This document shows, piece after piece, positions 29,461-29,636 of a stretch of DNA of 32,315 nucleotides. The DNA lies in contig NW_021829621.1 in the NCBI RefSeq assembly GCF_006345805.1, positions 1 to 32,315 of the forward strand. Direction: 5' to 3'. Each line of letters starts with the position of its first letter. Positions within the stretch are counted from its first letter, which is position 1. Under the pieces are notes generated by a model. It worked only from the letters and a program-made list of their open reading frames with translations, was not told the DNA's origin and ran no database searches. This DNA comes from Octopus sinensis. Its lineage: Eukaryota. The position numbers and the translations under genes are program-made.

Positions 29461-29632
29461 GATCGTTAGCCACTACACACGATTTTCTCTCCTTGTTTTT
29501 TCTGTGTCCCTTTCTGTAGAAGAGCGTAGGCTCGAAACGTAAAAGACTTTTTCTATTCTCGAGCGTTATACTAATACATCTGTTTGTTTTGTACACCACC
29601 TGTCTTCGTCTTTTGTTGTTTTCGTAAACTCT

Positions 29633-29636
<4 letters not shown>
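29461..29636 (+). mobile_element. ~176-bp unit in (TA)n carrying a hammerhead-like motif; candidate Penelope-type terminal repeat or non-autonomous derivative
   Basis: Unique sequence with sharp boundaries into (TA)n on both sides. Contains ctttCTGTAGAAGAGCGTAGGCTCGAAACGTAAAAG. Same strand as the upstream Penelope-like ORF remnant. Confidence 0.55.
29510..29547 (+). ncRNA. Minimal type-I hammerhead ribozyme-like motif with variant core
   Basis: CTTT-CTGTAGA-A-GAGC-gtag-GCTC-GAAA-C-G-TA/AAAG. Stem I CTTT:AAAG, stem II GAGC:GCTC, palindromic ACGT stem III, GUA triplet. Core reads CUGUAGA instead of CUGANGA, with an extra A after position 9. Confidence 0.55.

What the first reader, a model, noticed from the sequence alone, without database searches (positions are those of the whole stretch)
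29461..29636. Small (TA)n-embedded unit carrying a variant-core hammerhead ribozyme, downstream of a Penelope-like RT-endonuclease
Seen: a ~176-bp unique unit with sharp (TA)n boundaries holds a full minimal type-I hammerhead layout at 29510-29547 (stem I CTTT:AAAG, stem II GAGC:GCTC with GTAG loop, GAAA, palindromic ACGT, GUA site). The core reads CUGUAGA-A rather than CUGANGA. Established: Penelope-like element repeats carry minimal type-I hammerheads with palindromic stem III that work best as dimers, and small non-autonomous ribozyme-bearing retroelements (retrozymes) exist in plants and animals. Inference: this may be a microsatellite-targeting, hammerhead-bearing non-autonomous retroelement mobilised by a Penelope-type RT. 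If U at core position 6 is the family consensus, it would be an unusual natural catalytic-core variant.
Basis: partly seen in the sequence, partly recalled or inferred. Interest (0 to 1): 0.75.

Follow-up and report, generated by a model that had tools for sequence, protein, structure and literature searches.

The report
Decayed hammerhead in Penelope element tail
The 176-bp unit is most likely the non-coding 3' tail of a long-dead Penelope-like retrotransposon, and its usual small hammerhead ribozyme motif carries one core mutation, so it is an ordinary relic rather than a new ribozyme variant or a new mobile element.

Summary
The motif is real. At 29510-29545 (+) the sequence reads CTTT CTGTAGA A GAGC GTAG GCTC GAAA CG TA AAAG. 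A descriptor allowing one core mismatch finds only this site in the window, against 0.005 expected per shuffle.

It has the published hallmarks of Penelope-like-element (PLE) minimal hammerheads:
- a 4-bp helix I
- one unpaired base between A9 and G10.1
- a G10.1-C11.1 pair
- a palindromic ACGU helix III

About 660 nt upstream on the same strand lies a badly decayed PLE RT/GIY-YIG remnant (27821-28850). A minus-strand SINE and microsatellites separate the two. With that block removed, the motif sits about 216 nt after the ORF stop. It lies 103 nt before (TA)n. Both distances fall inside the ranges seen in intact PLE relatives.

All nine comparator PLE-type hammerheads I recovered have A at core position 6. 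Only this copy has U. The unit is single-copy in the window, is not tandem, and folds worse than shuffled sequence.

The source genome could not be reached, so the family consensus was not determined. The best reading is a dead PLE 3' end with a private A6U mutation. The kind of feature is already known, and interest is low.

The parts
27821..28273 (+). PLE reverse-transcriptase remnant, N-terminal motifs (about aa 212-368 of ~750-aa relatives). It is 5'-truncated and has frameshifts and stop codons.
   Evidence: tblastn with PLE proteins P0077/P0080 and others, E 1e-8 to 5e-12; my own frame reading
28287..28454 (+). PLE RT-EN linker remnant (aa ~559-613). About 190 aa of RT core are deleted between 28273 and 28287.
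   Evidence: tblastn, 43-45% identity, 2 in-frame stops
28534..28854 (+). GIY-YIG endonuclease remnant (..ENYIGQTNIRLRQRTTLHRSQIK..). It has 4 in-frame stops and the ORF ends at about 28852-28854.
   Evidence: tblastn to aa 641-746 of P0077/P0080, E ~1e-16 to 1e-18. Several close members of the same hit set, including P0088, P0050 and P0069, carry precomputed PF01541 GIY-YIG hits. P0077 and P0080 themselves list RVT_1, PF28514 and PF26215 but not PF01541.
28855..28995 (+). Unique sequence after the ORF stop. I infer it is the proximal part of the PLE 3' UTR.
   Evidence: Position only; no similarity to any fetched locus
28996..29205 (.). (CTA)n/(CTG)n microsatellite plus a short junction. Part of the block that interrupts the PLE tail.
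   Evidence: Sequence
29206..29397 (-). tRNA-derived SINE copy lacking its distal ~75 nt. A later insertion between the PLE remnant and the unit.
   Evidence: 82-88% identical to copies at 14416-14608, 24902-25116 and 17015-17205
29398..29459 (.). Compound (CA)n/(TA)n microsatellite on the left flank of the unit
   Evidence: Sequence; tract list
29460..29636 (+). The unit. I infer it is the distal 3' non-coding end of the PLE.
   Evidence: Single copy in the window. Spacing matches relatives: GAAAC box to (TA)n is 103 nt, against 83-148 nt in L004/L005/L007. Stop to GAAAC box is about 216 nt after removing 28996-29459, against 109-287 nt in relatives.
29510..29545 (+). Minimal type-I hammerhead-like motif with an A6U core change (U6 = 29517). 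Predicted cleavage falls between 29541 and 29542.
   Evidence: Descriptor hit. Shuffles give 0.005 per window. A metagenomic eukaryotic contig carries the same 22 specified bases with a canonical core.
29637..29824 (.). (TA)n tract, presumed remnant of the insertion target
   Evidence: Sequence; TRF and tract list

Best explanation
The unit is the distal 3' non-coding end of the same dead Penelope-like element whose RT and GIY-YIG remnants lie at 27821-28854 on the same strand.

The likely history is this. The element once inserted into a (TA)n tract by endonuclease nicking and target-primed reverse transcription from its 3' end. Later, a minus-strand SINE and microsatellite growth (28996-29459) split the tail from the body.

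The motif at 29510-29545 is that element's ordinary minimal type-I hammerhead. In active copies such motifs are thought to cut tandem or dimeric PLE transcripts by pairing their palindromic helix III in trans. In this copy, base 29517 has changed the essential A6 to U. I therefore expect the motif to be inactive or nearly so, and to have no present function.

Shown here:
- the motif and its anatomy
- the PLE remnant and its decay
- the SINE insertion
- the spacing match with relatives
- A6 in every comparator

Inferred:
- that the remnant and the unit were once contiguous
- that U6 is a private mutation
- the cleavage role
For: - Motif anatomy read from the sequence. It matches four features that PMC4209133 lists as emerging independently of the descriptor in PLE minimal hammerheads: short helix I, an unpaired base between positions 9 and 10.1, a G10.1-C11.1 pair, and palindromic 15.2-16.2.
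- One hit in the window against 0.005 expected per shuffle.
- A same-strand PLE remnant with about 13 in-frame stops across the aligned segments, frameshifts, a ~190-aa internal deletion and a 5' truncation.
- The intervening block contains a SINE copy shared with three other places in the window.
- In relatives with intact ORFs, the hammerhead GAAAC box lies 109-287 nt after the stop, and about 700 nt in L010. It lies 83-148 nt before a (TA)n run. The window gives about 216 nt and 103 nt.
- Retroelement copies are normally truncated at the 5' end, not the 3' end. The remnant therefore needs a 3' end, and the unit supplies one in the right place and orientation (inference).
- All nine comparator hammerheads have A6.
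- Substitutions at A6 give low activity (PMC3088659).
- PMC4209133 states that most genomic minimal hammerheads are single motifs from truncated PLEs.
Against: - No sequence similarity outside the ~30-nt hammerhead links the unit to any PLE 3' UTR I could fetch. The closest relatives share only 30-46% protein identity with the remnant, so their UTRs cannot be aligned to it.
- A 62-nt (CA)n/(TA)n tract lies between the SINE and the unit. No SINE target-site duplication is visible. A (TA)n tract may therefore have already separated the remnant and the unit.
- Other transposon fragments in the window are also bounded by (TA)n. The flanks alone therefore prove little.
Confidence: 0.5

Rival explanations
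1. The unit is a separate, severely 5'-truncated copy of a PLE: only the last ~176 nt, including the hammerhead. It inserted on its own into the (TA)n tract next to an older PLE remnant, or as part of the partial-tandem arrangements that PLEs often form. The hammerhead is again a decayed ordinary copy.
For: - (TA)n lies directly on both sides of the unit.
- The metagenomic contig L001 shows this very situation. Two copies of one hammerhead family share a 3' end about 62 nt after the motif. One copy is cut off right at helix I.
- PMC4209133 reports that most minimal hammerheads are single motifs from truncated PLEs.
- PLEs commonly form partial tandems (PMC8557442).
Against: - The upstream remnant would then lack its own 3' end, which is unusual for a retroelement.
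- The same strand, the collinear order and a spacing within the range of relatives would all be coincidences.
Confidence: 0.3
2. The unit is a member of a distinct small non-autonomous hammerhead-bearing retroelement, a monomer of a non-LTR retrozyme or a SINE-like PLE derivative. A PLE RT mobilises it into (TA)n, and U6 may be the family consensus.
For: - The unit length (177 nt) is within the 51-972 bp reported for non-LTR retrozyme consensus sequences. Monomeric copies of such families exist (bioRxiv 10.64898/2026.07.22.740005).
- Retrozymes derive from PLE terminal repeats (same paper).
- (TA)n lies on both flanks.
Against: - There is no tandem arrangement and no second copy in 32 kb.
- No related sequence was found by two protein-space probes of the unit's open minus-strand frame, by an exact ORF look-up, or by DNA pattern scans.
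- The unit RNA folds worse than 199 of 200 shuffles, z = +2.35. Known retrozyme and viroid-like circular RNAs are highly self-paired (my own knowledge).
- A6 is present in all nine comparators.
- An adjacent PLE body explains the unit without invoking a new family.
Confidence: 0.12
3. The hammerhead-like layout is a chance arrangement in unique DNA caught between two microsatellites, unrelated to any ribozyme.
For: - The 48-nt motif is not thermodynamically unusual, z = -0.37.
- One core position deviates from the consensus.
- Rfam gives no hit.
Against: - 0.005 hits expected per shuffled window against 1 observed.
- Three literature-defined features not imposed by a bare CUGANGA...GAAA search are all present.
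- The motif lies on the same strand as, and downstream of, a PLE ORF remnant.
- The same 22 bases recur in a two-copy, 5'-truncated repeat family in another eukaryote.
- Rfam also misses that canonical control.
Confidence: 0.03

Closest known systems
Minimal type-I hammerheads (min-HHRs) in the terminal repeats and 3' ends of Penelope-like elements (Cervera & de la Pena 2014, PMC4209133)
   Same: - Helix I of 4 bp
- CUG..GA and GAAA boxes
- One unpaired base between A9 and G10.1
- G10.1-C11.1 pair
- Palindromic ACGU in place of a real helix III, implying action as a dimer
- Location 3' of a PLE RT/GIY-YIG ORF on the same strand
- Occurrence as a single dispersed motif
   Different: Position 6 is U instead of the invariant A. 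Helix II is 4 bp, at the short end of the 4-8 bp range reported there. No family consensus is available for this copy.
Non-LTR retrozymes of animals: tandem type-I hammerhead repeats derived from PLE terminal repeats (bioRxiv 10.64898/2026.07.22.740005)
   Same: Small, non-coding, carries a type-I hammerhead of PLE origin, and has a size within the reported range.
   Different: It is not tandem. No other copy was found. The RNA is poorly self-paired. It lies next to a PLE body that accounts for it.
(TA)n-associated PLE clades: Naiad, for which (TA)n is a preferred target, and Neptune, for which an endonuclease-linker motif was proposed to bias insertion toward microsatellites (Craig et al. 2021, PMC8557442)
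   Same: The 3' boundary lies in (TA)n. Relatives L004, L005 and L007 also run into (TA)n 83-148 nt after the hammerhead box.
   Different: I did not assign the remnant to a clade. The endonuclease is C-terminal, so this is not a Naiad. Naiads also lack canonical hammerheads.
Natural hammerhead core variants: A6C in phage Bcep176, and U3-A8 covariation (Perreault et al. 2011, PMC3088659; PMC4209133)
   Same: A deviation at a normally invariant core position in a genomic hammerhead.
   Different: Those variants were assayed or recur across many copies. A6C cleaves only slowly (below 0.1 per min). Here the change is seen in a single decayed copy, with no sign of conservation or compensation.

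Membership tests
PLE minimal hammerhead (min-HHR) | Conserved catalytic boxes CUGANGA and GAAA | tested here: not met
   GAAA is present. The first box reads CUGUAGA, with U at invariant position 6 = base 29517. I therefore file it as a mutated relic of this family, not as an intact member.
PLE minimal hammerhead (min-HHR) | [quoted passage not shown] | tested here: met
   A at 29521. The feature is described in PMC4209133.
PLE minimal hammerhead (min-HHR) | G10.1-C11.1 closing pair of helix II | tested here: met
   G29522 pairs with C29533. Helix II is GAGC/GCUC, 4 bp.
PLE minimal hammerhead (min-HHR) | Palindromic positions 15.2-16.2 (helix III formed in trans), followed by U16.1 and H17 | tested here: met
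   ACGU at 29537-29540, then A at 29541, giving a GUA site.
PLE minimal hammerhead (min-HHR) | Located in the terminal repeat or 3' non-coding end of a PLE, on the ORF strand | tested here: inconclusive
   The motif is on the same strand as, and about 660 nt downstream of, a PLE RT/EN remnant, with a SINE block in between. The spacing fits relatives. Contiguity is not proven.
PLE minimal hammerhead (min-HHR) | Consensus family with covariation among genomic copies | not testable with these tools
Probes in protein and DNA collections found no other copy.
PLE minimal hammerhead (min-HHR) | Self-cleavage of dimeric RNA | not testable with these tools
   This needs a bench assay. Even canonical min-HHRs cleave weakly in vitro (PMC4209133).
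Non-LTR retrozyme | Head-to-tail tandem repeats, each with a type-I hammerhead | tested here: not met
   TRF lists no array covering the unit in the rows shown (19 low-scoring rows were cut off), and blastn finds no second copy in the window.
Non-LTR retrozyme | Multi-copy family of non-coding units, expressed as circular RNA | not testable with these tools
   No genome or transcriptome of the source is available. The only related evidence is indirect: the unit RNA is poorly structured, z = +2.35.
Endonuclease-positive Penelope-like element (the upstream remnant) | Telomerase-like RT followed by a C-terminal GIY-YIG endonuclease in one ORF | tested here: met
   tblastn places RT aa 212-368, linker aa 559-613 and EN aa 641-746 of ~750-aa PLE proteins in order on the + strand. 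Several members of that hit set carry RVT_1 and GIY-YIG Pfam hits. Pfam does not recognise the decayed window fragments themselves.

The most novel reading that the evidence does not exclude
U at core position 6 is the consensus of a real, multi-copy, (TA)n-targeting family of short hammerhead-bearing PLE derivatives in this genome. That would be a natural A6U core variant kept by selection, either for slow or regulated cleavage or for a role other than cleavage.
Probability: 0.05. Interest if true: 0.5.

Novelty: already known. Interest (0 to 1): 0.13.

Why it matters
As it stands, it matters little. It is one more dead copy of a motif known since 2014 to occur by the thousands in animal genomes, in a setting that is already described: the 3' end of a PLE, running into (TA)n.

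Its practical value is for annotation. The stretch 27821-29636 should be read as one decayed PLE interrupted by a SINE. The hammerhead should not be counted as active.

It would matter only if the source genome showed U6 conserved across many copies. That would add a tolerated A6 variant to the very short list of natural hammerhead core variants.

Tried and rejected
- **Rfam.** Scans at gathering and E<=10 thresholds gave no hammerhead. I rejected this as evidence because Rfam also missed the canonical-core control in L001.
- **Protein-space probes for other copies of the unit.** I used its open minus-strand frame. The word-indexed search found nothing. The full HMMER search returned only P0002, a ubiquitin-protease-like protein with 13 internal repeats. 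That is a summed-score artefact.
- **Exact look-up of ten window ORFs** to locate the source genome. None is in the collection.
- **Contig look-up for P0001.** Not on record.
- **DNA pattern scans.** The 22-base pattern found nothing in viral or prokaryote-genome collections. A 21-mer across the cleavage site found nothing in either.
- **Alignment of the unit's flanks** to PLE 3' UTRs, by MAFFT and low-stringency blastn. There is no similarity beyond the hammerhead. A 10-nt inverted match (29559-29568) to the L001 helix II region is at chance level (E = 44).
- **Pfam on the decayed window fragments** (PLE, mariner-like, LINE-like). No hits.
- **CpG depletion as an age marker.** The window has a CpG observed/expected ratio of 0.95, so this is uninformative.
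- **My eye reading of a GIY-YIG C-terminus upstream of the L001 hammerhead.** tblastn with the PLE set did not confirm it: 0 hits, and only a 6-aa match. I treat L001's link to PLEs as resting on its 5'-truncated two-copy structure only.
- **Alternative core parses.** U as an insertion after G5 would give A at position 8 with C at position 3, which is worse than the single A6U reading.

Full report
**What is in the sequence**

- CTTT (29510-13)
- CTGTAGA (29514-20)
- A (29521)
- GAGC (29522-25)
- loop GTAG
- GCTC (29530-33)
- GAAA (29534-37)
- CG, T, A (to 29541)
- AAAG (29542-45)

The unit 29460-29636 sits between a compound (CA)n/(TA)n tract (29398-29459) and a long (TA)n tract (29637-29824). 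It has no second copy in the 32-kb window (blastn, word size 7).

**Is it more than chance?**

I wrote a descriptor for a minimal type-I hammerhead. It required:
- helix I of at least 4 bp
- CUGANGA with at most one mismatch
- 0-1 unpaired base
- helix II of at least 4 bp with a 3-8 nt loop
- GAAA
- a palindromic inner helix III of 0-6 nt
- U, then H

It finds exactly this one site on both strands. The mean over 400 dinucleotide-preserving shuffles is 0.005 sites per window. The descriptor was written after seeing the motif, so that number is optimistic.

Three of the motif's features are not needed for a bare core match. They are the ones Cervera and de la Pena list as emerging on their own in PLE minimal hammerheads: an unpaired base between positions 9 and 10.1, the G10.1-C11.1 pair, and palindromic 15.2-16.2 (PMC4209133). 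The only real deviation is U at position 6.

Rfam gives no hammerhead hit even at E<=10. It also misses a canonical-core minimal hammerhead in a control locus, so this negative result carries no weight. Thermodynamic folding is not informative either. The 48-nt motif has z = -0.37, and the canonical control has z = -1.24.

**The neighbourhood**

The window is from a repeat-rich animal genome. It holds a U6 snRNA gene, many microsatellites, tRNA-derived SINE copies and eye-read mariner-like and LINE-like fragments (not confirmed). I could not identify the organism.

tblastn with PLE proteins places three pieces of a single PLE ORF in order on the + strand:
- aa ~212-368 at 27821-28273
- aa 559-613 at 28287-28454
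- aa 641-746 at 28534-28827

The ORF ends at about 28852-28854. This copy is 5'-truncated and lacks about 190 aa of RT core. It has frameshifts and about 13 in-frame stops across the aligned segments (six of them in the linker and endonuclease), so it is old and dead. The matching proteins are ~750-aa RT plus C-terminal GIY-YIG ORFs, many of them from bivalve molluscs.

Between the ORF end and the unit lie:
- 141 nt of unique sequence (28855-28995)
- a (CTA)n/(CTG)n tract
- a minus-strand SINE copy at 29206-29397, 82-88% identical to three other copies in the window
- the (CA)n/(TA)n tract

**Related sequences from elsewhere**

A metagenome scan with CTGNNGAAGAGCNNNNGCTCGAAACGTA (22 specified bases) returned two contigs holding the same eukaryotic locus. 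There the motif reads GCT CTGACGA A GAGC TAAC GCTC GAAACGTA AGC. The architecture is the same and the core is canonical.

The same contig has a second, diverged copy on the other strand. It differs at GGGC (keeping a G-U pair), at GUC, and at AGU (again a G-U pair). The two copies share a 3' end about 62 nt after the motif but differ in their 5' extent. One is cut right at helix I. That is the signature of 5'-truncated retroelement tails.

By eye, the sequence upstream of the longer copy looks like an endonuclease C-terminus. tblastn did not confirm this, so I do not rely on it.

For PLEs with intact ORFs that are the closest relatives of the window remnant, I fetched the encoding contigs. Each has a hammerhead-type box after the stop codon:
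- L005/L006, L009 and L010 have canonical CUGAUGA or CUGAAGA cores.
- L003, L004 and L007 have AUGAAUA.
- All nine comparators have A at position 6.

The GAAAC box lies 109-287 nt after the stop, and about 700 nt in L010, where a satellite-like insert intervenes. In three of the contigs a (TA)n run begins 83, 110 and 148 nt after the box.

In the window the box is 103 nt before (TA)n. With the 464-nt SINE/microsatellite block (28996-29459) removed, it is about 216 nt after the stop. Both values fall inside the ranges seen in relatives.

**Attempts to find the family consensus**

None of these succeeded:
- The unit's minus-strand frame is open, so I used its 59-aa translation as a probe. The word-indexed search found nothing. 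The exhaustive HMMER search gave only a repeat-protein artefact.
- Ten window ORFs are absent from the exact-sequence index.
- Further DNA patterns found nothing.

**Interpretation**

The most economical reading is that 27821-29636 is a single dead PLE whose 3' tail was separated from its body by a SINE insertion and microsatellite growth. The hammerhead is the element's ordinary minimal ribozyme with a private A6U substitution.

Retroelements lose their 5' ends, not their 3' ends. The upstream remnant therefore needs a tail, and the unit supplies one with the right strand, order and spacing.

A close alternative is a separate, very short 5'-truncated PLE copy inserted into the same (TA)n tract, as seen in L001.

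The retrozyme-like reading is weaker, for four reasons:
- There is no tandem arrangement and no other copy.
- The unit RNA folds worse than 199 of 200 shuffles, z = +2.35.
- The adjacent PLE already explains the unit.
- The general idea is itself already published (PMC4209133; bioRxiv 10.64898/2026.07.22.740005).

U6 as a functional variant is unlikely. A6 is invariant in the comparators. A natural A6C variant cleaves at below 0.1 per min, and mutational work shows low activity for changes at this position (PMC3088659). In a copy as decayed as its neighbour, one hit among about 11 invariant core positions is what neutral decay would give.

**How it worked when alive (established knowledge plus inference)**

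PLE transcripts from tandem or partial-tandem copies carry one minimal hammerhead per tail. Two such motifs pair their palindromic helix III in trans and cleave after the GUH site. The GIY-YIG endonuclease nicks the target, here (TA)n. The RT then primes on the nick from the 3' end of the RNA. None of these steps can be shown from sequence. Even canonical min-HHRs cleave poorly in vitro.

**Verdict**

The kind of feature is already known, and interest is low.

Two side observations may be of more interest than the finding itself. One is a second hammerhead candidate in the window with a canonical core, at 16807-16846. The other is an apparent A3-U8 covariant core in three PLEs with intact ORFs.

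Noticed in passing
window 16807-16846 (+): A second type-I hammerhead candidate, this one with a fully canonical core: TCA CTGATGA G GTCACA GAAG TGTGAC GAAA G-AA-C TC TGG. It has the PLE-style unpaired base before G10.1, a 6-bp helix II, a 2-bp helix III with a 2-nt loop, and a 3-bp helix I. A relaxed descriptor finds only this site and the given finding in the window. Shuffles give 0.03 hits with one mismatch allowed and 0 of 400 with none. No clear PLE ORF lies nearby; there are only weak tblastn matches (E ~0.03-0.08) at 16284-16433. Rfam does not report it.
   Followed up: partly
L003 2590-2625, L004 2678-2715, L007 2871-2905 (3' UTRs of PLEs with intact 752-754-aa ORFs): The hammerhead box in these three elements reads AUGAAUA in place of CUGANGA. 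The C3-G8 core pair appears replaced by A3-U8. A6, GAAA, the ACCGGU helix III and U-H are all kept, and helices I and II show compensatory changes between copies. U3-A8 covariation is published (PMC4209133, PMC3088659). A library search for 'A3-U8' with 'hammerhead' found no paper. Activity is untested.
   Followed up: partly
window 17935-18042 (-): U6 spliceosomal snRNA gene, full length, 92 bits against a gathering score of 44.
   Followed up: no
window 14416-14608 (-), 17015-17205 (+), 24902-25116 (-), 29206-29397 (-), and a partial copy from about 29925: At least four copies of one tRNA-derived SINE, 82-88% identical to each other. ARAGORN calls none of them a tRNA. The copy at 29206 lacks about 75 nt of its distal part.
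   Followed up: partly
window 15069-15136 with 15543-15608, and 15007-15044 with 15283-15320: Two nested pairs of inverted terminal repeats (MITE-like or DNA-transposon ends), each bounded by (TA)n tracts. (TA)n flanks are therefore not specific to the hammerhead unit in this genome.
   Followed up: no
window 13066-13648: A 184-bp tandem repeat, 3.2 copies, 92% matches. It contains the AGGACAAACA motif also seen at 6188, 13133, 13317 and 24303.
   Followed up: no
window about 5491-6709 (+) and 19809-20386 (+): Open frames that look by eye like mariner/Tc1-type transposase pieces and a LINE RT C-terminal tail. Pfam did not confirm the fragments tested.
   Followed up: partly
L010 8300-8760: A satellite-like block of GC-rich repeats (GGGCC..ATCGGCCC..CGAAAAACGGGCC) sits between the PLE stop codon and its hammerhead. 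It pushes the motif about 700 nt downstream.
   Followed up: no
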